Assembly (NCBI RefSeq): GCF_036588685.1
Contig: NC_086378.1
Location: 84,878,001-84,942,000, forward strand
Source: Mytilus trossulus
Taxonomy: Eukaryota
Reading direction: 5' to 3'
Length of the DNA: 64,000 nt
The notes beneath the pieces are model-generated. The model was not told the DNA's origin, searched no databases, and saw nothing but the letters and a program-made list of their open reading frames with translations. This document shows positions 2,716-53,799 of this stretch, piece by piece. The position numbers and the translations under genes were made by a program. Positions within the stretch are counted from its first letter, which is position 1. The number at the start of each line of letters is the position of its first letter.

Positions 2716-5205
2716 TATATGTTCCGGACCATATGAGTATTTGGACCATACGCGTATGGTCATGACCATATGGGTATATACTCATATGGTTTGACCGTAC
2801 GCGTATGGGCGGGGTAGTTACCACTCTGTTACATTTTACTTTTAATACCTCTAAACTCGTCATATAATATGACCGTTCATTAAAAAGAGGCTATCTTATA
2901 AGTAAATTTATTGATTTATAGTATGATGAACAGATTAGTTAATTTTATATATAACAATTAAAAGTTTCACATAGTTAATTTTACTTACTTGTCAAAACAA
3001 ATAATAAACACATTTTATACCGATGATATTACCGATTTGTTAAAGTTTACGAGTGAATGGCAACTTAAAAAAATAATTCAAAAAAAATCTTAATCAACTG
3101 TTACACAAGAAGTCGCTGGAAAGAAACATAGTTTACATAGTTGTCTTGTGAATATGGTGTTTTGCAATCATTTTATGATATTTGAGATCTAGAGCTCCTT
3201 AAAAACACCGTAGAAATATGAAAAGGATCATGCACAACCAAGACTTGAAAACGCCAAAAAAATATGAGACCATGTGAAAGTAAATATCACCCCAAGCCTA
3301 CATGCAAGAATGTAATTAGCGAGGAAAACTGTAGCATCAAAATTAATTTTTTACGAAGTATTTGAATTAAAAAAATAATACATTGTCATGTAACCATCAT
3401 TGTTTTTTTTAGATAAAGTTTATGAGTTATAGACAATTCACTTGGAAACCCAACATATACCATCACGACACTTACCAAAGAGGAAATCCTGGATAATCAT
3501 AGGTCTGTTCTTTGTTCCTTTGGTATTTCAACCAAAGATGAAGAACTGGATCTTCCATCACTGTATTGGATACCTAAACTACATAAGTGTCCTTACAAAC
3601 AACGGTATATTGCTGGGTCTTCCAAGTGCTCCACGAAACCCCTTTCTAAATTATTAACATCTATTTTATCAGCAATCAAAGACGGGCTTCAAAGTTATTG
3701 TGAAACTGCCTATTCTAGAGGTGGCGTGAATCAGATGTGGATACTTAAAAATTCCAAAGATCTTTTAGAGTACATACAATCTAACTCTCTTTCATCTTGT
3801 AACAGTATTAAAACATTTGACTTTTCTACTCTTTACACAAGTATTCCACATTCCAAACTAAAAGACAAATTAAAAGAGTTGGTATTACTTTGCTTCATAA
3901 AAAAGAATGGCCAAAGTAGATACAAGTATCTTGTCTTAGGGAGGGATAAATCCTACTTTGTAAAGAATCATTCTGATTCAAACAAAAAATTCTCTGAAAC
4001 CGATATTATCAAGATGCTTGATTTCTTGATTGACAACATATTTGTTACGTTCGGAGGACGTGTTTTTTCAACAGACTGTCGGCATCACAATGGGAACAAA
4101 CTGTGCCCCACTACTTGCTGACTTGTTTCTTTATTATTATGGGACTGACTTCATGCAGGAACTTCTTAGGAAGAAAGATAAGAAGTTAGCAATATCCTTT
4201 AACTCTACTTTCCGCTATATAGATGACGTTCTTTCACTAAACAATTCAAAATTTGGTGACTATGTGGATCGCATCTATCCCATCGAATTGGAGATAAAGG
4301 ATACTACAGATACAGTTAAGGCTGCTTCATATCTTGACTTACATCTAGAAATTGACAATGAGGGTCGGTTGAAGACAAAACTTTACGACAAAAGAGATGA
4401 TTTCAGTTTTCCAATTGTGAACTTTCCATTTCTAAGTAGCAACATTCCAGCAGCACCTGCATACGGGGTATATATCTCCCAATTGATACGATATTCCCGT
4501 GCTTGCATTTCCTATCATGATTTTCTCGATAGAGGGTTACTGCTTACAAGGAAGCTATTTAACCAAGAGTTCCAAATGGTGAAGTTGAAATCATCCCTTC
4601 GTAAATTTTACGGACGCCATCACGAGTTGGTTGACCGTTATGGAATAACCGTTTCACAAATGATATCGGATATGTTCCTTACGTCGTAACTACAATCCCC
4701 TTTCCTTTCATGAATTTGACCTACCGAATTTTACTTTTAACCGGATTTGTAATCACATAAGCAACACGACGGGTGCCGCATGTGGAGCAAGATCTGCTTA
4801 ACCTTCCGGAGCACCTGAGATCACCCCTAGTTTTTGGTGGGGTTCGTGTTGTGTATTCTTTAGTTTTCTATGTTGCGTCATGTGTACTATTGTTTTTCTG
4901 TTTGTCTTTTTTCATTTTTAGCCATGGCGTTGTCAGTTTGTTTTAGATTTACGAGTGTGACTGTCCTTTTGGTATCTTTCGTCCCTCTTTTATGTACTTT
5001 TTATCATGTAATTTAAAAAAATACTTATACGGTCCAAATACTCATATGGTCCGGCCCGTTAATAACCAAACGAGTATTATACTCATATGGTCCGACCATA
5101 CGCGTACGGTCGGACCATACGCGTATGGTCGGACCATATGAGTATTCGCATATGGTCATGACCATACGCGTATGGTCCAAATACTCATATGGTCCGGAAC
5201 ATATA
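2716..5205. mobile_element. Non-autonomous TIR element (MITE-like) with ~55-bp TIRs, interrupted by a Penelope-like RT fragment
   Basis: Left end TATGTTCCGGACCATATGAGTATTTGGACCATACGCGTATGGTCATGACCATATG is the reverse complement of ~5149-5203. TA-rich flanks; palindromic subterminal repeats CCATACGCGTATGG. Confidence 0.75.
3425..4990 (+). mobile_element. 5'-truncated Penelope-like (Naiad-type, family A) retroelement: RT plus 3' UTR, one frameshift
   Basis: Motifs LYWIPKLHK, TFDFSTLYT, MGTNCAP, YIDD, KLYDKRDDF, AYGVYISQLIRY. Frameshift in T-run at ~4062-4068; stop at 4689. No C-terminal GIY-YIG. Confidence 0.85.
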
Positions 5206-15744: not shown

Positions 15745-17180
15745 CTCATCACTGTATTGGATACCTAAACTACATAAGTGTCCTTACAAACAACGGTATA
15801 TAGCTGGGTCTTCCAAGAGCTCCACGAAACCTCTTTCTAAATTATTAACATCTATTTTATCAGCAATCAGAGACGGGCTTCAAAGTTATTGTGAAACTGC
15901 CTATTCTAGAGGTGGCGTGAATAAGATATGGATACTTAAAAATTCCAAAGATCAATTAGAGTACATTCAATCTAACTCTCTTTCATCTTGTAATAGTATT
16001 TAAACATTTGACTTTTCTATTCTTTACACAAGTATTCCACATTCCAAACCAAAGGACAAATTGAAAGAGTTGGTATTGCTTTGCTTCATAAAAAAGAATG
16101 GCCAACGTATATACAAGTATCTTGTCTAAGGGAGGGATAAATCCTAGTTTGTAAAGGATCACTCTGATTCAAACAAAGAATTCTCTGAAACTGACATTAT
16201 CAAGATGATTGATTTCGTGATTGACAACATATTTGTTACGTTCGGAGGACTTATTTTTCAACAAACTGTCGGCATTTCAATGGGAACAAATTGTGCCCCT
16301 CTACTTACCGACTTGTTTCTTTATTATTATAAGGCTGACTTCAAGCAGAAACTTCTTAGAAAGAAAGATAAGAAGTTAGCGATATCCTTTAACTCTACTT
16401 TCCGCTATATAGATGATGTTCTTTCACTAAATAATTCAAAGTTTGGTGACTATGTGGAACTCATCTATCCCATCGAACTAGAGATGAGGATACTACAGAT
16501 ACAGTTAAGTCGGCCTCATATCTAAACTTACATCTAGAAATTGACAATGAGGGTCGGTTGAAAACAAAACTTTACGACAAAAGAGATGATTTCAGCTTTC
16601 AAATTGTGAACTTTCCATTTCTAAGTAGCAACATTCCAGCAGCGCCTGCATACGAGGTATATATCTCCCAATTGATACGATATTCCCGTGCTTGCATTTC
16701 CTATCATGATTTTCTTGATAGAGGGTTGCTGCTCACAAGGAAGCTATAAAACCAAGAGTTCCAAATGGTGAAGTTGAAATCATCCCTTCGTAAATTTTAG
16801 GGACGCCATCACGAGTTGGTTGACCGTTATGGAATAACCGTTTCACAAATGATATCGGATATGTTCCTTACTTCGTAACTACAATCCCCTTTCCTTTCAT
16901 GAATGTAACCTACCGAATTAGACAATTTACCGGATTTTTTATCACATAAGCAACACGACGAGTGCCACATGTGGAGTAGGATCTGCTTACCCTTCCAGAG
17001 CACCTGAGATCACCCCTAGTTTTTTTGTGGGGTTCATGTTGCTTATTATTTAGTTAACTATGTTGTGTCATGTGTACTATTGTTTGTCTGTTTGTCTTTT
17101 TTTTTATTTTTAGCCATTGCGTTGTCAGGTTATTTTCGATTTATGAGTTTGACTGTCCCTTTGGCATCTTTCGTCCCTCT
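15745..17180 (+). mobile_element. Second, more decayed copy of PLE family A (RT + 3' UTR)
   Basis: Co-linear with ~3555-4990; several stops and indels; MGTNCAP and YIDD retained. Confidence 0.85.
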
Positions 17181-19329: not shown

Positions 19330-19373
19330 GCGTCACTGATGAGTCTTATGTAGACGAAACGCGCGTCTGGCGT
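19330..19373 (+). ncRNA. Type I hammerhead ribozyme (copy 1 of 5)
   Basis: Stem I GCGTCA/TGGCGT; core CTGATGA...GAAA; stem II GTCT/AGAC; palindromic stem III ACGCGCGT; predicted cleavage at GUC, after 19367. Confidence 0.9.
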
Positions 19374-19684
19374 ATTAAATTATAATCCTTGTACTTTTGA
19401 TGACTATTTACACCACTGGGTCGATGCCACTGCTGGTGGACGTTTCGTCCCCGAGGGTATCACCAGCCCAGTAGTCAGTACTTTGGTGTTGACATGAATA
19501 TCAATTATATGGTCGTTTTTATAAATTTTCTGTTTACAAAACTTTGAATTTTTCGAAAAACTAAGGATTTTCTTACCCCAGGAGTAGATTACCTTAGCCG
19601 TATTTGGCACAACTTTTTGGAATTTTGGATCCTCAATGCTCTTCATCTTTGTATTTATTTGGCTTTTTAACTATTTTGGTTTGA

Positions 19685-19728
19685 GCGTCACTGATGAGTC
19701 TTATGTAGACGAAACGCGCGTCTGGCGT
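19685..19728 (+). ncRNA. Type I hammerhead ribozyme (copy 2)
   Basis: Same motif, +355 bp. Confidence 0.9.
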
Positions 19729-20039
19729 ATAAAATTATAATCCTGGTACTTTTGATGACTATTTACACTACTGGGTCGATGCCACTGCTGGTGGACGTTT
19801 CGTCCCCGAGGGTATCACCAGCCCAGTAGTCAGCACTTTGGTGTTGACATGAATATCAATTATATGGTCATTTTTATAAATTTTCTGTTTACAAAACTTT
19901 GAATTTTTCGAAAAACTAAGGATTTTCTTACCCCAGGAGTAGATTACCTTAGCCGTATTTGGCACAACTTTTTGGAATTTTGGATCCTCAATGCTCTTCA
20001 TCTTTGTATTTATTTGGCTTTTTAACTATTTTGGTTTGA

Positions 20040-20083
20040 GCGTCACTGATGAGTCTTATGTAGACGAAACGCGCGTCTGGCGT
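20040..20083 (+). ncRNA. Type I hammerhead ribozyme (copy 3)
   Basis: Same motif, +710 bp. Confidence 0.9.
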
Positions 20084-20394
20084 ATAAAATTATAATCCTG
20101 GTACTTTTGATAACTATTTACACCACTGGGTCGATGCCACTGCTGGTGGACGTTTCGTCCCCGAGGGTATCACCAGCCCAGTAGTCAGCACTTTGATGTT
20201 GACATGAATATCAATTATATGGTCATTTTTATAAATTTTCTGTTTACAAAACTTTGAATTTTTCGAAAAACTAAGGATTTTCTTACCCCAGGAGTAGATT
20301 ACCTTAGCCGTATTTGGCACAACTTTTTGGAATTTTGGATCCTCAATGCTCTTCATCTTTGTATTTATTTGGCTTTTTAACTATTTTGGTTTGA

Positions 20395-20438
20395 GCGTCA
20401 CTGATGAGTCTTATGTAGACGAAACGCGCGTCTGGCGT
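20395..20438 (+). ncRNA. Type I hammerhead ribozyme (copy 4)
   Basis: Same motif, +1065 bp. Confidence 0.9.
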
Positions 20439-20749
20439 ATAAAATTATAATCCTGGTACTTTTGATAACTATTTACACCACTGGGTCGATGCCACTGCTG
20501 GTGGACGTTTCGTCCCCGAGGGTATCACCAGCCCAGTAGTCAGCACTTTGATGTTGACATGAATATCAATTATATGGTCATTTTTATAAATTTTCTGTTT
20601 ACAAAACTTTGAATTTTTCGAAAAACTAAGGATTTTCTTACCCCAGGAGTAGATTACCTTAGCCGTATTTGGCACAACTTTTTGGAATTTTGGACCCTCA
20701 ATGCTCTTCATTTTTGTATTTATTTGGCTTTTTCACTATTTTGGTTTGA

Positions 20750-20793
20750 GCGTCACTGATGAGTCTTATGTAGACGAAACGCGCGTCTGGCGT
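20750..20793 (+). ncRNA. Type I hammerhead ribozyme (copy 5)
   Basis: Same motif, +1420 bp. Confidence 0.9.
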
Positions 20794-44639: not shown

Positions 44640-47600
44640 TGTCTAAGAATATAACTTAAACACACTAATTAATACATTAAAAAGTTCTATTAGATGTTAA
44701 AAAGAAATACGCAATATTTCGCTAAACAAATTAGCTTCATCGGGCGTGTGCATCTCTCAAGGTGAAATCGGATGCATGAAAAAAATATTTTTGTAGCTTA
44801 ATCTATACAAGAGTTGAAAGAGAGTGTAACATATTGATTTATGTTGCATAAAATATGTTTGTAGCTACAACTACGTGAAGTTGGAATAAAAGTTTAACAC
44901 ATTTATAGATGTTCGATTAATTGTATGAATTTCTATAAATTAATTTGTATTATTTTAAGATAATTATGGTTTTGGTTTGCTTTTAAATCTTTTTTCGTCT
45001 CTCTCATTGAGTCCATCAAGTTCAAGAGTTCGTAACTGGTGCATCCAAAATCTCTCTCTTTTTTGTCTTCCTTGTGTATCCCAATTTTGATTTTTCTCAA
45101 TGATTTGAAATGTGACGTTTTCAAAATCATGTCCAGCTCTTAAAAGGTGTCTTGTAATTGGGCAGTTCCTTTCTTTTGTATAAAATGACCGATGGTTATT
45201 TAGTCGGATGTTAAATGGTGTTTCTGTTTCACCAACATATTGTAATCTGCAAGTTCCACACGTTAGAACATAAATGCAATTTTGCGTTTGCAATTTGATG
45301 TTATAAATATGTTGAAATTTTTCTTTGTGACTGTGCTGAAGAACTGGGTTTCGATGTTGGCGACTTTACAGCACTTTCAATTGTCCCTTCTGCATGACTT
45401 ATAACCTCCGATTGTTGATATTTCCTGTTTAGATACTTTGGATGTTACTAGAATATCTTTGAGGTTTTTGGGTCTGCGGTAAGCCATAACGGGAGGTGAT
45501 GGAAAAATCTCTCTCAAGGAAGGATCATTTTCAATAAGACGCCAGTGTTTGTGGACAATTGATGAAAGATTTGTCAGGTGAGGATGAAAGCTAACAACAA
45601 ACGGGATTTTATTTGTCTGGGCCGTCTTTTCTTTGTATTCAAGTAGGTTTGTTCGGTCTTTTTCTTTTGCTTTCCCGAAAGCTTCTGAAATACTTTTGTT
45701 CTTATAACCTCTTGATTTGAGTTGCTGTCTGAGTTGCCTTAAACAATGGTTTAATTTAGATTCCGATGAACAAATCCGTTTTAACCTGATGGCTTGGCTG
45801 TACGGAATGCTCCGGGAGCAGTGTTTCGGGTGACAACTCTTCGGAGAGAGAAATTGGTGTTTATCAGTTTTTTTGGTGTGAAGGTCAGTTGTCACGACTC
45901 CGTTTTCTAAAGTTATGGTGGTGTCGAGAAACGCAATTTTCTCATTTGAAACTTCAGATGTGAACTTTATCAATTGATGAAAGTTGTTACAGAAATCGAA
46001 AAATTCTTGCAGACGTTCTGCAGTTTCGTTCCATTTGATGTCGATGTCATCAATATAACGGAGACAAGACAAGGGTTTGTATGGTACATTCGTAAGGATG
46101 CGTTCTTCGAGACTCCCCATGAAAATGTTGGCAAAAGAAGGTGCCATTTTGGTTCCCATACTGGTACCGTCAACCTGCAAGTAGTGCTGGTCGTTGAATA
46201 CAAAATTGTTGTTTTCAAGCACTAGTCTCAGCAAATGAACCAGACAGTCTGTTGGGGGATGTTTATCCTTACGATTGTTCCATACTTGTTCACAAGCGAC
46301 TATTCCTTCATTTTTGGGAATATTTGTGTATAAAGAAGACACATCCATCGATACCAAAATTGTGTTGTTTGGTAATGGATTTAATGAATCCATTTTCTTC
46401 AAATAATCTGTAGTATCTTGAATGTAAGATGGCATTGTTCTAACATGTGGTCTGAGATGGTAATCCCCAAATTCAGATATTTTTTCGGTTGGATGTCCAT
46501 TTGCAGATACTATAGGTCTTCCCGGACTCCCTTCTTTATAAAGTTTTGGGAGCAAGTAAAATCGACCGGCTGTGCAGGTTTCATCAGGGCGTAGATAGTC
46601 GTACGTGTCGTCATCTATATGTTTTTTGCTGTTCATGTCTGAAAGGACCTCATTAATGTGTTCACTTATTTTCTTGGTAGGATCACTTTCTAAATGTTTG
46701 TAAAATTTTGTATTTGAAAGCTGACGATTCCCTTCTTCAATGTAGTCGGTTTTGTTGATCACTACAACTGCACTTCCTTTGTCTACTTGTTTAATAACAA
46801 TATCATCACGGCTTTTTAAATTATTTATGGCCTGGCTTTCTTGTTCAGAGAGATTCCGTAAACCTTTGCCGCTGACTGATGATTTTACTTCAGTTTTAAT
46901 TGATGATATAAAGGATTCTAAATTGTCATTCTTACTCCTTGGTGGATTCCATTCGCTTTTCTTTTTAAATCTTGGGATGCACTTGTCCTCTTTATCACTC
47001 TCATATTCCGAATCATTCATTCCGGCTCCTTGTAAAAAAAAATTGTGTTGCCTATTAAAATGTTCTTTTAGGCGAAGACGTCTTGCAAATTGATCCACGT
47101 CTGTCTCCAGTTGTAGGTTGTTAATGTTTGCTGGTATAGGACAGAAGTTTAGACCTCTACTTTATAATTTTTCTTCGGAGTTGGTTAATTATGTTGACGA
47201 TAGATTAACAACTAAATTATTCTCCGCGGGTCGTGTCCGTTTTTTGAAACGTCTTTCTCTTAGTTGTTTTGAATCACTCTCTTTTAAAATATTATTTATA
47301 TCAAAATTTGAAAATTGCTGTTTAAGACCATCTCTGGTGAATTTATTTTGTTGCTTGGTTTTGTAATTTTGACTTTCTATTCTTTCAATATCGGATAATC
47401 TTTTCTTGATTAAATCCATGTCTCCGTTAGTAATGGACATTGGTGGTTTAGAAAGTATTTCATTTATTCCAGAGTTGATTTGTTTATATGAATAGATAGA
47501 AAAGCAGAGTAAAAGTTGGAGAAGCCGTAAAGAACAATTGAATAAAGTTTCGTCCCAACGTTTCAGAAATCTGAAGGACTTTACACCCGGTGTTTGTGGG

Positions 47601-48193: not shown

Positions 48194-49476
48194 CACTTTT
48201 TTGGTCTTTTGGAAAATGTTGTTTGTGCTGTATTTAGACCCTTCTACAACGAAATTTGTTTTACATGCACACGTATAAAAATTGCGGTTTTTATCCAACG
48301 CAATCATAGGTTTGAACGTAGTTTTCAATTTAGACTCGTTTATATTTTTTCATTTGTGGCTTGTATCATATTTTCCCTCCAGTTTATATGATCCGTTCAT
48401 CCTATATTGACTCTTAGAATTCAAGAGTCTATCTAAAAAAGAGGGTACTTTTTTCTAAAAATGAGGGTACTTTTTATATGGCCTTCCAAATACCGTTTCG
48501 ATCCCTAACATCACTGAAGAGACATTTATTGTCGAAATCCGGATCTGGTGTACAAAAAAAATATTGACACCTTATGTTTGTGGCATAGCATCGTGGCCAC
48601 ACGTTAATTGTTTTCTGTTTAGTATTAAATTGATATTAAGATCCTTTTTGTTACATCTTGTGATCAATTTTATTTTTGCAATCGCCAATGGCAGTCAGCA
48701 GGGTTAAAGAACATCAGTTGTTCGACCTGTTAGTCAAATGCGTTTTGTTTAAATATACTTTTTCACTTTTTTGGTCTTTTGGAAAATGTTGTTTGTGCTG
48801 TATTTAGACCCTTCTACAACGAAATTTGTTTTACATGCACACGTATAAAAATTGCGTTTTTTATCCAACGCAATCATAGGTTTGAACGTAGTTTTCAATT
48901 TAGACTTGATTATATTTTTTCATTTGGTCTTGTATCATATTTTCCCTCCGGTTTATATGATCCGTTCATCCTATATTGACTCTTAAAATTCAAGAGTCTA
49001 ACTAAAAATGAGGGTACTTTTTTTAAAAATTAGGGTACTTTTTATATGGCCTTCCAAATACCGTTTAGATCCCTAACATCACTGAAGAGACATTTATTGT
49101 TAAAATCCGGATATGGTGTACAAAAAAATATTGACACCTTATGTTTGTGGCATTACATCGTGGCCACACGTTAATTGTTTTCTGTTTAGTATTAAATTTA
49201 TATTAAGATCCATTTTGTTACATCTTGTGATCAATTTTATTTTGCAATCGCCAATGGCAATCAGCAGGGTTAAAGAACATCAGTTGTTCGACCTGTTAGT
49301 CAAATGCGTTTTGTTTAAATATACTTTTTCACTTTTTTGGTCTTTTGGAAAATGTTGTTTGTGCTGTATTTAGACCCTTCTACAACGAAATTTGTTTTAC
49401 ATGCACACGTATAAAAATTGTGGTTTTTATCCAACGCAATCATAGGTTTGAACGTAGTTTTCAATTTAGACTCGTT
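48194..49476 (+). repeat. Tandem ~570-bp units (~2.3 copies) with a hammerhead, ending in (TA)n; pLTR/retrozyme-like
   Basis: Units start at 48194, 48764 and 49330; (TA)n at ~49477-49492. Confidence 0.85.
48508..48551 (+). ncRNA. Type I hammerhead ribozyme (second family)
   Basis: ACATCA-CTGAAGA-GACA-TTTAT-TGTC-GAAA-TCCGGA-TC-TGGTGT; palindromic stem III ATCCGGAT; AUC cleavage after 48545. The copy at 49076-49119 has GAAA>AAAA and is probably dead. Confidence 0.85.
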
Positions 49477-50026
49477 TATATATATATATATAGTTAGACA
49501 GCAAATAAAACTGAGAATGGAAATGGGGAATGTGTCAAAGAGACAACAACCCGACCAAATAAAAAACAACAGCAGAAAGTCACCAACAGGTCTTCAATGT
49601 AGCGAGAAATTCCCGCACCCGGAGGCGTCCTTCAGCTGGCCCCTAAACAAATATATACTAGTTCAGTGATAATGAACGCCATACTAATTTCCAGATTGTA
49701 CACAAGAAACTAATATAAAAATAATACAAGACTAACAAAGGCCAGAGGCTCCTGACTTGGGACAGGCGCAAAAATGCAGCGGGGTTAAACATGTTTGTGA
49801 GATCTCAACCCTCCCCCTATACCTCTAACCAATGTAGAAAAATAAACGCATAACAATACGCACATTCAAATTCAGTTCAAGAGAAGTCCGAGTCTGATGT
49901 TAGAAGATGTAACTAAAGAAAATAAACAAAATGACAATAATACATAAATAACAACAGACTACTAGCAGTTAACTGACATGCCAGCTCCAGACTTCAATTA
50001 AACTGACTGAAAGATTATAATTTCAT

Positions 50027-50091
50027 CATATGAACATCAGGCACAATCCTTCCCGTTAGGGGTTTAGTATCATACCATCATAACATATATG
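50027..50091 (-). promoter_or_regulatory. Type II SECIS element
   Basis: 5'-CAUAUAUGUU AUGAU GGUAUGAUACU AAA C CCC UAAC GGG A AGGAUUGUGCC UGAU GUUC AUAUG-3'. AUGA, 12 nt, AA, 25 nt, GA; UGAU/UGAU quartet; 11-position helix II with 10 pairs; apical mini-stem; helix I CAUAU/AUAUG. Confidence 0.85.
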
Positions 50092-50142
50092 AGAAGAACA
50101 TAACCCGTGTCATGCCAACAACTGTTTTTAGAATAAATGTCT

Positions 50143-53019
50143 TTAGTTCCGACGCAAAGACCTTATCATTGACTCAATATTAACGCCAAAATATGCAATC
50201 TTTAATGACTTGACAACAGTATCGTAATTATATCCCTTCTTAATCAGTCTATTTAAAGGTTTTGTAAGTTTCTGAGGTGAATACTGACATCTTTGTGCTT
50301 TATAAAGAATATTTCCATAAAAAATTGGATGTGAAATACCCGAACGTATAAAAAGTCTGCATGTTGAGCTATATTTACGAATGATGTCTTTATACCGATG
50401 ATAAAATTTAGTAAACGTTTTGACTAGTTTGTGATATCGAAAACCCTGGTGTAATAATTTTTCAGTAATACATAAATTTCTCTCGTTAAAATCTAAAACA
50501 TTGTTACAAACACGAGCGAATCGTACAAGTTGAGATATATAAACACCGTAAGATGGTGACAAGGGAACGTCACCATCTAAAAACGGATAATTAACGATAG
50601 GAAATGAAAAATCATCCCTTTTATCATAAATTTTAGTATTCAGCTTTCCGTTAGTGATATAGATATCAAGATCGAGGAAAGGGCAGTGGTCATTATTAGT
50701 ATTAGCTTTATTTAAAGTAAGTTCAGCAGGATAAATTTCATTAATATACATACTGAAGTCGTCATTATTGAGAGCCAAAATATCATCCAAATATCTAAAA
50801 GTATTATTAAATTTGTTTATCAGATGTTGTTTTGATGGGTCTTTGCTTATTTTTGTCATAAATTGTAACTCATAACAATACAAAAAGAGGTCCGCAATAA
50901 GTGGTGCACAGTTAGTCCCCATTGGAATTCCGATAATCTGACGATATACGGAATCCCCAAAGCGAACAAAAATGTTATCTAGTAAAAATTCAAGGGCATA
51001 TATAGTATCAAAGCAGGTCCAATTAAGTTTTTTTGTTTATTGCAACTAAAAAATGAACTAAAAGAGTTTGAACATATATATTCACATTCTGATTTTTTTT
51101 GAATGCCCATTTAATTAGGTGTGTGAATTTTTTTCTTAATGAGAATGTGAGGCAATGTGGTATACAGGGTAGAAAAATCAAAACTTTGAACAGATTCAAA
51201 ATCACCAATATGAGCATGCAATCTATCAAGTACTTCCAACGAGTTCTTGACACTCCAAAAGTAATTTATTCCCCTATTTTCGAAGGCCATATTTGAACAA
51301 TTTATTATAAGGTTTTTAATTGTACCAAGTGTGCTGGTAAGAAGAAGAGACAATTTAGTAGTTGAACAATGGCTTGAAGACGAAATAAATCTATATTTGT
51401 AAGGGGTTTTGTGTAGCTTCGGAAGCCAATACATAGTTGGGACTTTCATTGTATTTGGCTCTGATTGTAAAGCGGTGGCTAAAAGTTTATGTTTGTTACA
51501 GATTTCGTTTTCTAAAAATGGAGTCAGTTGGAATGTTGGTGAATTGGTGATTTCCCTTTTCAGAACCTCAATGTAAAATTTTACGTCAAACAATAGTAAT
51601 ATTATTAGCAGCTTTATCGGCCGGGACAAAAACAAATTCCTTGGCTAGTTCTTTTAGTTTATGTTTGATACGAGAAATAGGTTTATTGTGGTTATTGTTA
51701 ATAGTAAAATGCTCTTTAAAATGTTGAATACGTATATCAACTATCTTCATTACTGAATTAAAAAAAGAGTCCAAAGATTTTTTGTCAGCTTTTTCCCGTT
51801 TTATCCATTTCATACAGTAAGTATGGAGTGAGTCGTGGATGATATTACGACACTCATTCCAATTAATAATTGACGGGGGACGATATTTAGGTCCTTTACT
51901 GGGGAATGATTTTAACTCTCGGTCTTGAACGTTGTTAAGATCTCCTGTTATAACATGGGAAATGGGTCCATAAATATATGCGGAATTACTGCAATTACAC
52001 GACGTAGGTGTATTTTCACTGATATTAACATCTTTACACAATTGACTATAATTAAACACAAATTTCCGGGTAGATTTCTTGTAAATATAACAAATAAGAG
52101 GTAGCTCAGTATTGTCAAAATAACCAGGAATTTGTTCTTTAACAGAATGGTCGTTAAATATACCGGCAATATTTACAAAATCAAAGCCTTTATTGACATA
52201 CTTAATTTTAATAAAATGTTTTTTATGATCTTCAGGGCGATCAATTTTGGGAAATAATTTAGAATAACAATATGCCATAATAATTTGAACAATTTCATAC
52301 TTAGGACTGCTATATGAAATTGTGTTGCAATCCTCCAAAATTTTATTTAACTTATTAACCGGTAACGAACAGAGTTTTGTTAACAGATAATGTCTGCCGT
52401 TGTTTTTTGAAATAGAAATTAGGTCCGAAATATTGGTATGATTGGCCCGAAATTTTCTTTGATTGCGATTTGTTCTACGAACAGTTTTAGAAACTATATC
52501 CAAAATGTTAACGGAATTGGTTCTAGATATATTACCAATTCCCATGATATTATCATTTAGACCGAGAGGGTAAACTGTCTGTAATTTTTTAATCCAATTT
52601 AATTCAATTATTTTCCGTGATCGTACAAACTTTGAATGCGATTCACCAGGCTGCTTATTTACTACTTCTAAAGGTTGAACTGCTAAATATTTAAACGGAT
52701 GGTTGTGCTTCTTAAGGTGTTGGTAAATGATATTTTTGAATTTATTTGGTCTTTTAAAACGATACAGATGTTCTTGAGTGCGTTTAGATAAATATCGCCC
52801 AGTTTCTCCTACGTACTGAATACCACACCCCGGTTTGTTTCATGTGAGTAAATAAATAATACTGTTTGTTTTTCAAGTTATATCAGTTTCGAAATTTAAA
52901 GAAAATGTGCGACCATTAAACGTGGACCTTACCGTATTGTTGGTGGAAAGACGGGGACATGTAAGTCATTTTTTGGCATGACACTTATCGATAGAAGGGT
53001 AACCACGATTTTTATTGTT
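50143..53019 (-). pseudogene. GIY-YIG-RT polyprotein with four in-frame UGA (putative Sec) codons; interrupted by short indels
   Basis: CHAKK-U-LTC, DIT-U-KTNSIIYLLT-U-NKPGCGIQYVGET...KRTQEH...ELNWIKKLQTVYPLGLND, in frame with ORF 51586-52545; DKAANNITIV-U-RK; YWLPKLHK, SFDFSTLYT, MGTNCAP, YLDD; TAA at 50143. Confidence 0.85.
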
Positions 53020-53272
53020 AAAAATGTTATATACACATTACTACCTAACTGAAAGACTACAAGTGTCCGGTGTCAAAGTAATATATCAAGCTCTATTTCA
53101 TGAAAAGACTATAATTGATATGAATAAATCGGATCATCACAATCAAAAATCGGCCATCAATACAAAATGTGTCGTTATAACAGAAACACACATTTATATA
53201 CTTGTAACACAAAACACAGCCACTGGTCATGTACTGGACAACCTCTTCACCTTATTCTCATTATTGTTCCAG

Positions 53273-53502
53273 ATGTTCCAGATTCTAAGAAGTTTGATGT
53301 TACTTTGATGATATTACTACTTAGACATCTGACGTCATTGACCCCTCCTAATGGTGGATATGACAGACTGCCTTTATCATCAGAAACTACACCTGCTGCT
53401 GACCTCGCCAGAATCAAGTTTTATAGAAACGTCATGGCTCATCTAGATGATGGTAAAATAGACAGTACAGAGTTCTCTGCAGCATGGGATGATGTTACTG
53501 GT
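53273..53502 (+). CDS. Exon 2 of HEPN-STAND-ankyrin gene (HEPN catalytic half)
   Basis: Acceptor TTGTTCCAG (53271-53272), phase 1; DVPDSKKFDVTLMILLLRHL...ADLARIKFYRNVMAH (RxxxxH)...WDDVTG; donor GTAAGC at 53503. Confidence 0.9.
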
Positions 53503-53799
53503 GTAAGCATTTAGAACATTTTTTAATTATTTATCATAAATACTTTGTAAGCCAACCTATTATACGTGTGAGCGACTGTCATCAATTCACGTACATAGTC
53601 GTTGTTCGTCGTTATAGACATTTTCCAAAATATTTTCTTTGGACCAATTATAAAAACGCGATCATACTTGTTGAATTATCCTTCAAGTATTGGGCAAAGA
53701 ATACTGAACTACGTCGAAAATTCAAATCGAATAGTCTCTAATCAAATGGTAAAATCAAAAGCTCAAACGCATCAAGCACATCAAACGAATGGATAACAA

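What the first reader, a model, noticed from the sequence alone, without database searches (positions are those of the whole stretch)
49505..53020. Retrotransposon that appears to encode a multi-selenocysteine protein: four Cys-position UGAs plus its own SECIS
Seen: on the minus strand, the GIY-YIG region missed by the ORF track is in frame with ORF 51586-52545. After repairing short indels (~51579, ~51130, ~51095, ~51025; mostly A-runs), the ~950-codon frame has four internal stops, all TGA: 52966-68 (CHAKK-U-LTC, the CxxxxCxxC motif), 52873-75 (DIT-U-KTN), 52840-42 (IYLLT-U-NKPGC) and 51586-88 (DKAANNITIV-U-RK). The homologous positions 2 and 3 are Cys in the other PLE in this window (SNCK, IYVLTCGTC). 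There is no internal TAA or TAG. Established: Naiad PLEs have an N-terminal GIY-YIG and selenoprotein members have been reported, so the class is not new although this family may be. Inference: Sec sits in putative metal-binding positions of the endonuclease, which would tie expression of full-length EN-RT to selenium supply.
Basis: partly seen in the sequence, partly recalled or inferred. Interest (0 to 1): 0.92.

Follow-up and report, generated by a model that had tools for sequence, protein, structure and literature searches.

The report
Dead copy of selenocysteine-coding Naiad retrotransposon
This stretch is a broken copy of a very young, abundant Naiad-type Penelope-like retrotransposon whose endonuclease-reverse transcriptase gene carries four UGA codons at invariant cysteine positions and its own SECIS, a kind of element first described in 2021.

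Summary
Read in the register of an open genomic copy, the minus strand of 49505-53029 has exactly four stops in 955 comparable codons. All four are TGA, at the stated coordinates.

The window copy itself is dead. It lacks the 5' UTR and the first ~37 codons, and it carries four frameshifting indels and a 21-nt deletion, all copy-specific.

The family is alive-looking:
- There are hundreds to thousands of copies, about 1.6% apart.
- The ORF has 1002 codons.
- The TGAs are fixed: U1 about 35/38, U2 and U3 39/39, U4 30/30.
- Each TGA aligns to an invariant Cys in 35-44 distant Naiad proteins.

Evidence that the UGAs are decoded:
- Coding sequence is under purifying selection across all the UGAs (dN/dS 0.05-0.11 against a sister family; shared variants enriched for synonymous changes, p=1e-5).
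- A type-II SECIS lies 52 nt after the TAA.
- SECIS elements at the same place in related families show strong covariation. They occur in TGA-type families and not in the distant Cys-type clades.
- The host genome has tRNA-Sec.

Selenoprotein Naiads were published by Craig et al. 2021 (clams, spiders). This is a new member, from a different host. It has Sec at the second Cys of the CX2-5CxxC motif, which the paper reported only in a spider family.

The scan already noted the same kind of element elsewhere in this genome. Sec insertion itself remains untested.

The parts
49505..53029 (-). 5'-truncated, frameshifted copy of a Naiad-clade Penelope-like element (codons ~38-1002 of a 1002-codon ORF, plus the 3' UTR)
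   Evidence: Homology to the other genomic copies starts at ~53029 and ends at ...CCATTCTCA(G/A)TTTTAT. The lesions are listed.
52966..52968 (-). U1: TGA at the second Cys of the CX2-5CxxC motif (C-HAKK-U-LT-C), codon 55
   Evidence: TGA in about 35 of 38 copies and TTA in 3. The aligned column is Cys in 35/35 distant Naiad proteins. It is TGA in related families L062, L064 and L079 and Cys in others.
52873..52875 (-). U2: TGA at the Cys preceding the GIY-YIG motif, codon 86
   Evidence: TGA in 39/39 copies. Cys in 40/40 distant Naiad proteins.
52840..52842 (-). U3: TGA at the first Cys of the CCHH motif (IIYLLT-U-NKPGC), codon 97
   Evidence: TGA in 39/39 copies. Cys in 40/40 distant Naiad proteins. 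TGA in all 11 Sec-clade loci examined.
51586..51588 (-). U4: TGA eight residues after the DKA motif, codon 522
   Evidence: TGA in 30/30 copies. Cys in 44/44 distant Naiad proteins. TGA in 24 metagenome loci and TGT/TGC in 34.
52560..52986 (-). GIY-YIG endonuclease domain with CX2-5CxxC and CCHH motifs (approximate limits)
   Evidence: Alignment to full-length Naiad proteins. Pfam GIY-YIG matches the N-terminal part of Cys-type homologs P0129, P0131 and P0151.
51991..51999 (-). CxC linker motif (S-C-N-C-S), both Cys here
   Evidence: Read directly from the sequence. The first Cys is TGA in related families L064, L068, L079, L083 and L088.
51610..51618 (-). DKA motif (PADKAANN)
   Evidence: The motif is diagnostic of Naiads according to PMC8557442.
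50782..50793 (-). RT active-site motif YLDD
   Evidence: The column is invariant in alignment A1.
50143..50145 (-). TAA that ends the ORF
50027..50091 (-). SECIS (type II: AUGA core, AAA, mini-stem, GA), starting 52 nt after the stop
   Evidence: Rfam SECIS_1 at 32.3 bits. The core is invariant in 30 copies. Covariation across 12 related families. The clade model R1 scores it 74.4 bits.
49505..50142 (-). 3' UTR of the element (638 nt)
   Evidence: Shared by all copies, and joined head to tail to the 5' region in tandem copies.
51027..51582 (-). Span holding the four copy-specific frameshifts (+A ~51582, +A ~51134, +AA ~51100, -4 ~51027). A 21-nt deletion lies at ~52481.
   Evidence: The extra A at ~51582 is absent from 29 of 30 copies.

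Best explanation
The window holds a dead copy (5'-truncated, four frameshifts) of a very young, high-copy family of Naiad-clade Penelope-like retroelements.

Intact family members are about 4.02 kb long and are often arranged head to tail. They carry one 1002-codon ORF: an N-terminal GIY-YIG endonuclease, a CxC linker and a reverse transcriptase.

Four codons that are invariant Cys in other Naiads are UGA in this family:
- the second Cys of CX2-5CxxC,
- the Cys before GIY-YIG,
- the first Cys of CCHH,
- the Cys eight residues after DKA.

A type-II SECIS lies 52 nt after the UAA. It most likely recruits the host Sec machinery so that the four UGAs are read as selenocysteine, giving a four-Sec EN-RT protein.

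Shown here: the fixation of the TGAs, their alignment to Cys, purifying selection on all segments between and after the UGAs, a conserved and covarying SECIS, and tRNA-Sec in the host.

Inferred: actual Sec insertion, the role of Sec as a metal ligand or redox residue, and any dependence on selenium.
For: TGAs are the ancestral state of the family:
- U2 and U3 are TGA in 39/39 copies, U4 in 30/30 and U1 in about 35/38.
- About 93 of 100 further copies keep a 424-aa frame bounded exactly by U3 and U4.

Frame integrity: 3 of 12 ATG-bearing copies are open from ATG to TAA apart from TGAs.

Cys alignment: all four sites are invariant Cys in 35-44 divergent full-length Naiad proteins.

Selection:
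- Shared variants are 33 synonymous to 25 non-synonymous; singletons are 101 to 271 (odds ratio 3.5, p=1.3e-5).
- This holds without CpG sites, and separately for codons 97-521 and 522-1002.
- Against sister family L062, dN/dS is 0.05-0.11 in each inter-UGA segment that had enough sites, at pS about 0.25, and all four TGAs are kept. The 10-codon U2-U3 segment showed no differences.

SECIS:
- It is the only SECIS_1 hit in the 64-kb window, on the right strand, 52 nt after the stop.
- SECIS_1 hits occur in 12 of 19 TGA-type loci and 1 of 20 Cys-type loci.
- In the 12-sequence alignment, 15 of 18 pairs show compensatory changes and 90.7% of cells are paired, against about 43% when the partners are slid. 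AUGA/AAA/GA are conserved.
- The clade model finds it in further Sec-clade loci and in none of the distant Cys clades at E<=0.2 (one faint 17-bit match, E 0.75, in L128).

Host: two tRNA-Sec genes at 79.6 and 77 bits.

Precedent: PMC8557442.
Against: - No direct evidence of Sec insertion or of translation.
- Rfam SECIS_1 scores stay below the gathering score in this family (32.3 against 35) and no copy passes it.
- The SECIS sequences used for the covariation test were picked by a structure-aware model, which inflates the share of paired cells.
- Three copies have TTA (Leu) at U1, one of them with an otherwise open frame, so this position may be dispensable.
- Only one SECIS is present for four UGAs up to 2.9 kb upstream of it.
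Confidence: 0.88

Rival explanations
1. The TGAs are true stops. The family would then be a non-coding or non-autonomous lineage copied in trans by other Naiads, and the open frame downstream would be a leftover of recent decay.
For: The window copy and most other copies are broken. Other Naiad families exist in the same genome and window.
Against: - dN/dS is 0.05-0.11 in every inter-UGA segment that had enough sites, against a sister family about 25% diverged at synonymous sites, and all four TGAs are retained.
- Propagated variants carry an excess of synonymous changes.
- All four stops fall on invariant Cys codons (about 2e-5 by chance for Cys codons alone).
- A SECIS co-occurs with the TGAs.
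Confidence: 0.03
2. The UGAs are read through without selenocysteine, for example by near-cognate Cys, Trp or Arg tRNAs. The SECIS-like hairpin would then be irrelevant or serve another purpose.
For: - The Rfam score is under the gathering threshold.
- Some predicted proteins of related families show Trp (TGG) at the DKA+8 site.
- There are no experimental data.
Against: - The hairpin keeps AUGA, AAA and GA invariant while both helices covary.
- It is present in TGA-type families and absent from the distant Cys-type clades.
- Cys/UGA interchange at the same columns is the usual signature of selenoproteins.
Confidence: 0.05
3. The stops are an artefact of sequencing or assembly, or private mutations of this copy.
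For: The window copy has several private A-run indels.
Against: The same TGAs are present in more than 100 independent genomic copies and in unrelated metagenome contigs.
Confidence: 0.01

Closest known systems
Naiad_Mmer and Naiad_Scon, selenoprotein-coding Naiad PLEs of the clams Mercenaria mercenaria and Sinonovacula constricta (Craig et al. 2021, PMC8557442)
   Same: - N-terminal GIY-YIG plus RT in one ORF.
- UGA at the Cys before GIY-YIG, at the first Cys of CCHH and at DKA+8.
- SECIS just after the UAA/UAG.
- High copy number with 5'-truncated copies.
   Different: - The host has about 14 chromosome-scale contigs. From my own knowledge, not checked with a tool here, both clams have 19 chromosome pairs.
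- This family has a fourth UGA at the second Cys of CX2-5CxxC. It has none in RT6(D), where Naiad_Scon has its fourth.
- The SECIS here looks type II (mini-stem), whereas the paper reports type I.
- Sequence identity to the published consensuses could not be measured, because the paper's supplement is not held.
Naiad_Sdum, spider selenoprotein Naiad (same paper)
   Same: Four UGAs, including the second Cys of CX2-5CxxC.
   Different: The spider family also recodes the first Cys of that motif and does not recode the CCHH Cys. The paper infers an independent origin in spiders.
Cys-type Naiads (e.g. extended Penelope-2_CGi; here P0129, P0131, P0151, L089, L094, L095)
   Same: Same domain order and the same motifs (CX2-5CxxC, CCHH, CxC, DKA, YxDD), at 29-40% identity.
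   Different: TGT/TGC at all four sites and no SECIS after the ORF. The first two CCHH Cys are spaced C-xx-C, against U-xxxx-C in the Sec clade.
Selenoprotein P of bivalves (multi-Sec host protein; Baclaocos et al. 2019, as cited in PMC8557442)
   Same: Several UGAs decoded in one ORF in a host lineage with efficient Sec decoding.
   Different: An unrelated protein. From my own knowledge, not checked with a tool here, it has two SECIS elements and its Sec residues lie mainly in a C-terminal tail rather than at conserved Cys of catalytic or Zn-finger-like motifs.

Membership tests
Naiad clade of Penelope-like elements | Single ORF with the GIY-YIG endonuclease N-terminal to the reverse transcriptase | tested here: met
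   In the ORF, IIYLLT-U...IQYVGETG at codons ~91-110 lies upstream of YLDD at codon ~787. Pfam finds GIY-YIG N-terminal and RVT_1 C-terminal in full-length homologs. Pfam found nothing on the element's own pieces.
Naiad clade of Penelope-like elements | CX2-5CxxC and CCHH Zn-finger-like motifs in the endonuclease | tested here: met
   C-x4-U-x2-C and U-x4-C...H...H align to the Cys columns of 35-40 Naiad proteins. Two of the Cys are UGA.
Naiad clade of Penelope-like elements | CxC linker motif, and a DKA motif in place of DKG | tested here: met
   S-C-N-C-S at 51991-51999 and PADKAANN at 51610-51618.
Naiad clade of Penelope-like elements | Insertion-in-fingers domain between RT3(A) and RT4(B) | tested here: inconclusive
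   About 75 residues separate FDFSTLYTTLPH from IPMGTNCAPL, which fits a long insert. No comparison with canonical PLEs or TERT was made.
Naiad clade of Penelope-like elements | Pseudo-LTR or tandem arrangement and frequent 5' truncation | tested here: met
   Partial upstream copies are joined head to tail. Tandem spacing is 4016-4026 bp. First-look candidates numbered 4307 for the 3-kb query against 712 for its 5' 421 bp.
Naiad clade of Penelope-like elements | No canonical hammerhead ribozyme | tested here: met
   No hammerhead match in 49000-53600 at E<=10. The hammerheads at 19330-20793 belong to another repeat.
Naiad clade of Penelope-like elements | Insertion bias for (TA)n microsatellites | tested here: inconclusive
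   28 3' junctions are AT-rich but only a few are TA repeats. In the window, (TA)n starts 10 nt beyond the element's end.
Eukaryotic selenoprotein gene | In-frame UGA at positions that are Cys in homologs | tested here: met
Eukaryotic selenoprotein gene | SECIS in the 3' UTR with an AUGA core, unpaired AA and GA | tested here: met
   SECIS_1 scores 32.3 bits, below the gathering score of 35. A related family reaches 38.8 bits. Covariation is shown. SECISearch3 was not available.
Eukaryotic selenoprotein gene | Coding constraint continues downstream of the UGA | tested here: met
Eukaryotic selenoprotein gene | Host Sec-decoding machinery | tested here: met
   Two tRNA-Sec hits over the cut-off. 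SECISBP2 and eEFSec were not searched.
Eukaryotic selenoprotein gene | Selenocysteine demonstrated in the protein | not testable with these tools
   This needs 75Se labelling, mass spectrometry or ribosome profiling.

The most novel reading that the evidence does not exclude
Sec at metal-ligand positions of the endonuclease and at DKA+8 acts as a selenium-dependent gate on transposition. The thousands of dispersed 5'-truncated copies, each carrying a working SECIS, would be a reservoir from which host genes can acquire SECIS elements. The Sec-Naiad clade would also be far larger and more plastic than published, with 2-5 UGAs per ORF, including a site in the CxC motif, and with repeated Cys/Sec switching.
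Probability: 0.2. Interest if true: 0.75.

Novelty: new member of a known kind. Interest (0 to 1): 0.45.

Why it matters
Selenoprotein-coding transposons are so far documented in a single paper, on four families. This family adds a different host and a different set of recoded Cys positions.

It also adds comparative evidence that the paper did not give for these elements:
- constraint on the coding sequence across every UGA,
- covariation in the SECIS,
- co-occurrence of SECIS and UGA across families,
- apparent reversions from Sec to Cys.

Practical consequences:
- ORF-based annotation will split such elements at every TGA. Many database proteins start or end exactly at these sites.
- Thousands of SECIS-bearing fragments are scattered through the genome. 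These can confuse selenoprotein prediction, or seed new selenoprotein genes.

Tried and rejected
- Pfam on the element's own inter-UGA pieces gave no meaningful hit. Domain identity therefore rests on alignment to full-length homologs and on Pfam hits in those homologs.
- Rfam at gathering threshold on 19 genomic copies gave nothing.
Divergent families of this genome could therefore not be read, and metagenome contigs were used instead.
- The 2021 paper's supplement is not held, so there was no direct comparison with Naiad_Mmer or Naiad_Scon.
- The careful tree did not finish. The quick IQ-TREE tree is reported. 32 of the 80 metagenome loci were left out because no DKA site was found or the frame closed before 380 codons.
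- The two other truncated Naiad-like RTs in the window (+3444-4665, +15749-16854) start after the DKA site and have no SECIS, so they could not serve as Cys comparators.
- The three TTA copies at U1 share no other private variant. A distinct subfamily could not be shown.
Natural copies were used as register.
Full report
**What is in the window**

On the minus strand, 53029 to 49505 is one copy of a retroelement. Its frame runs through a GIY-YIG endonuclease region, a linker with an S-C-N-C-S motif, PADKAANN and an RT with YLDD. It ends at TAA 50143-50145 and is followed by a 638-nt 3' UTR.

Read in the register of an open genomic copy, 955 codons can be compared. They hold exactly four stops, all TGA: 52966-68, 52873-75, 52840-42 and 51586-88.

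The copy is dead:
- Homology to the other copies begins at ~53029. Those copies extend ~470 bp further and supply the ATG (MKLRNGK...), so the 5' UTR and about 37 codons are missing here.
- It has private lesions: +A ~51582, +A ~51134, +AA ~51100, -TATG ~51027, and a 21-nt deletion at ~52481.

The 5' flank is host DNA: a plus-strand exon-like ORF with a HEPN_DZIP3 domain at 53167-53511.

**The family**

- The host assembly is 1.3 Gb with about 14 chromosome-scale contigs. It gave 4307 first-look candidates for the 3-kb query and 712 for its 5' 421 bp.
- Fourteen copies that cover the whole 3-kb query differ by 1.6% on average, and most variants are singletons.
- Copies often lie head to tail at 4016-4026 bp spacing.
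- The ORF has 1002 codons.
- Three of twelve ATG-bearing copies are open from ATG to TAA apart from TGAs.

TGA tallies across copies:

| Site | TGA | Other |
|---|---|---|
| U1 | about 35 | TTA in 3 |
| U2 | 39/39 | none |
| U3 | 39/39 | none |
| U4 | 30/30 | none |

In about 93 of 100 further copies, the frame between U3 and U4 is exactly 424 aa and closed at both ends. So the source elements carried all four TGAs.

**Are the TGAs at Cys positions?**

An exhaustive profile-free search with the U3-U4 piece found many full-length relatives of 850-1280 aa. In a MAFFT alignment of 44 of them, the four columns are Cys in every protein that covers them: 35/35, 40/40, 40/40 and 44/44.

The sites are:
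- the second Cys of CX2-5CxxC,
- the Cys preceding GIY-YIG,
- the first Cys of CCHH,
- the Cys eight residues after DKA.

Only 30 of 459 single-step nonsense paths in the ORF fall on Cys codons.

**Is the sequence beyond the UGAs translated?**

- Within the family, variants shared by two or more copies arose in propagating lineages. They are 33 synonymous to 25 non-synonymous. Singletons, which reflect decay after insertion, are 101 to 271 (odds ratio 3.5, p=1.3e-5).
- This result survives removal of CpG transitions. It also holds separately for codons 97-521 and 522-1002.
- A sister family on a marine metagenome contig (L062) also has a 1002-codon ORF with four TGAs and no other stop. Against it, pS is about 0.25 and dN/dS is 0.05 before U1, 0 between U1 and U2, 0.10 between U3 and U4, and 0.11 after U4. 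The 10 codons between U2 and U3 showed no differences.

All segments with enough sites are therefore under protein-level constraint.

**SECIS**

- Rfam SECIS_1 matches 50091-50027(-) at 32.3 bits (gathering score 35). The match starts 52 nt after the TAA and is the only such hit in the 64-kb window. No genomic copy reaches the gathering score.
- The AUGA, AAA and GA elements are unchanged in 30 copies, apart from a few single-copy changes around the AAA.
- Eighty metagenome loci with related RTs were fetched. The DKA+8 codon is TGA in 24 of them and TGT/TGC in 34.
- SECIS_1 hits of 26.6-38.8 bits occur in 12 of 19 TGA-type loci. All are on the sense strand, just after the ORF. Among 20 Cys-type loci there is one hit: L063, the closest relative, whose endonuclease region is not on the contig.
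- The twelve SECIS sequences align with UGA (of the AUGA core), AAA and GA invariant. 15 of 18 pairs show compensatory changes. 90.7% of cells are paired, against about 43% when partners are slid by 1-3 columns, and 0 of 500 shuffles reach the observed values.
- Caveat: these sequences were chosen by a structure-aware model.
- A model built from them finds further sense-strand hits in Sec-clade loci that were not used to build it: L086, L097, L083, L068, L072, L069 (L078 and L070, also found, are near-duplicates of two training loci). It also finds hits in L067 and L075, which have Cys at DKA+8; L067 nests in the Sec clade, while L075 was not in the tree. It finds none in the distant Cys clades at E<=0.2, only one faint match in L128 at E 0.75.
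- The apical mini-stem makes this a type II SECIS.
- The host has two tRNA-Sec genes, at 79.6 and 77 bits.

**Wider picture**

- In a quick RT tree, all TGA-type loci fall in one clade of 22 (SH-aLRT 99), with two nested Cys-type members. This fits one gain of Sec and two reversions to Cys at DKA+8.
- Within the clade the sites are a mosaic:

| Loci | Sites recoded as TGA |
|---|---|
| L061, L062, L064, L079 | all four |
| L068, L083, L088, L077, L078 | U2-U4 |
| L082, L072 | U3 and U4 only |

- Five families also have TGA at the first Cys of the CxC motif, which gives up to five UGAs. The text of the 2021 paper that I read does not list that site.
- Many database proteins begin two or three codons after U4, or end exactly at it. 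Gene callers are being split by these codons.

**Comparison with the literature**

Craig, Yushenova, Rodriguez and Arkhipova (2021, PMC8557442) defined Naiads. They reported four selenoprotein families with three or four UGAs each.
- In the clam families the recoded sites are the Cys before GIY-YIG, the first Cys of CCHH, and DKA+8 (plus one site in RT6(D) in Naiad_Scon).
- The CX2-5CxxC Cys are recoded only in the spider families.
- "Grade A" SECIS elements lie just after the stop.

Two further literature searches found no later report.

The present family therefore belongs to a known kind. It differs in host and in having Sec at the second CX2-5CxxC Cys together with the three clam sites. 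I could not compare it with the published consensuses.

**Earlier notes of this scan**

Earlier notes of this scan on other DNA of the same genome reached the same reading. One follow-up reported relatives with up to five UGAs. I did not rely on those notes.

**Limits**

- There is no evidence of transcription, translation or Sec insertion.
- The three TTA (Leu) copies at U1 are unexplained.
- A selenium-dependent control of transposition, and a metal-ligand role for Sec, are inferences.

Noticed in passing
window 53167-53511 (+): An ORF with a strong HEPN_DZIP3 (PF18738) match (E 2e-22) lies about 140 nt from the truncated 5' end of the element, on the opposite strand. It is probably an exon of a host gene into or beside which the element inserted.
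   Followed up: partly
L064, L068, L079, L083, L088 (metagenome contigs), aligned to codon 385 of the family ORF (window 51997-51999): Related Sec-clade Naiads have a fifth in-frame TGA at the first Cys of the diagnostic CxC motif. L064 and L079 thus carry five UGAs. The text of the 2021 paper that I read does not list this site.
   Followed up: partly
L063, L067 (metagenome contigs): These two families are nested inside the Sec clade. They have TGT/TGC at DKA+8 but still keep a SECIS-like element after the ORF. This looks like Sec-to-Cys reversion at one site.
   Followed up: partly
window 52966-52968 and own-genome loci L002, L004, L009: Three copies have TTA (Leu) instead of TGA at U1 and share no other private variant. 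One of them is otherwise open to the TAA. A recurrent G-to-T change or a source variant are both possible; this is unexplained.
   Followed up: partly
window ~45275-46057 (-): A second Penelope-like element with the canonical order (RT with YIDD upstream, GIY-YIG IYVLTCGTC...YVGET downstream) and Cys at the positions homologous to U2 and U3.
   Followed up: no
window 3444-4665 (+) and 15749-16854 (+): Two 5'-truncated Naiad-like RT fragments, 36-47% identical to this family's RT. Both start after the DKA site. Neither Rfam nor the clade model finds a SECIS after them.
   Followed up: partly
window 19330-20793 (+): Five hammerhead type I matches (33 bits, gathering score 34) spaced 355 bp apart. 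This is a tandem array unrelated to the Naiad copy.
   Followed up: no
G000 C10:63843916-64492367: Long tandem arrays (period about 891-900 bp) of an 81-nt tRNA-like gene that scores 45.9 bits on the tRNA-Sec model, just under its cut-off. It is probably another long-arm tRNA. The two convincing tRNA-Sec genes are on C9 and C1.
   Followed up: no
proteins P0079, P0088, P0089, P0091, P0097, P0110: Database proteins of related families show Trp (presumably TGG) at the DKA+8 column. These are probably gene calls on copies in which the TGA mutated to a sense codon.
   Followed up: no
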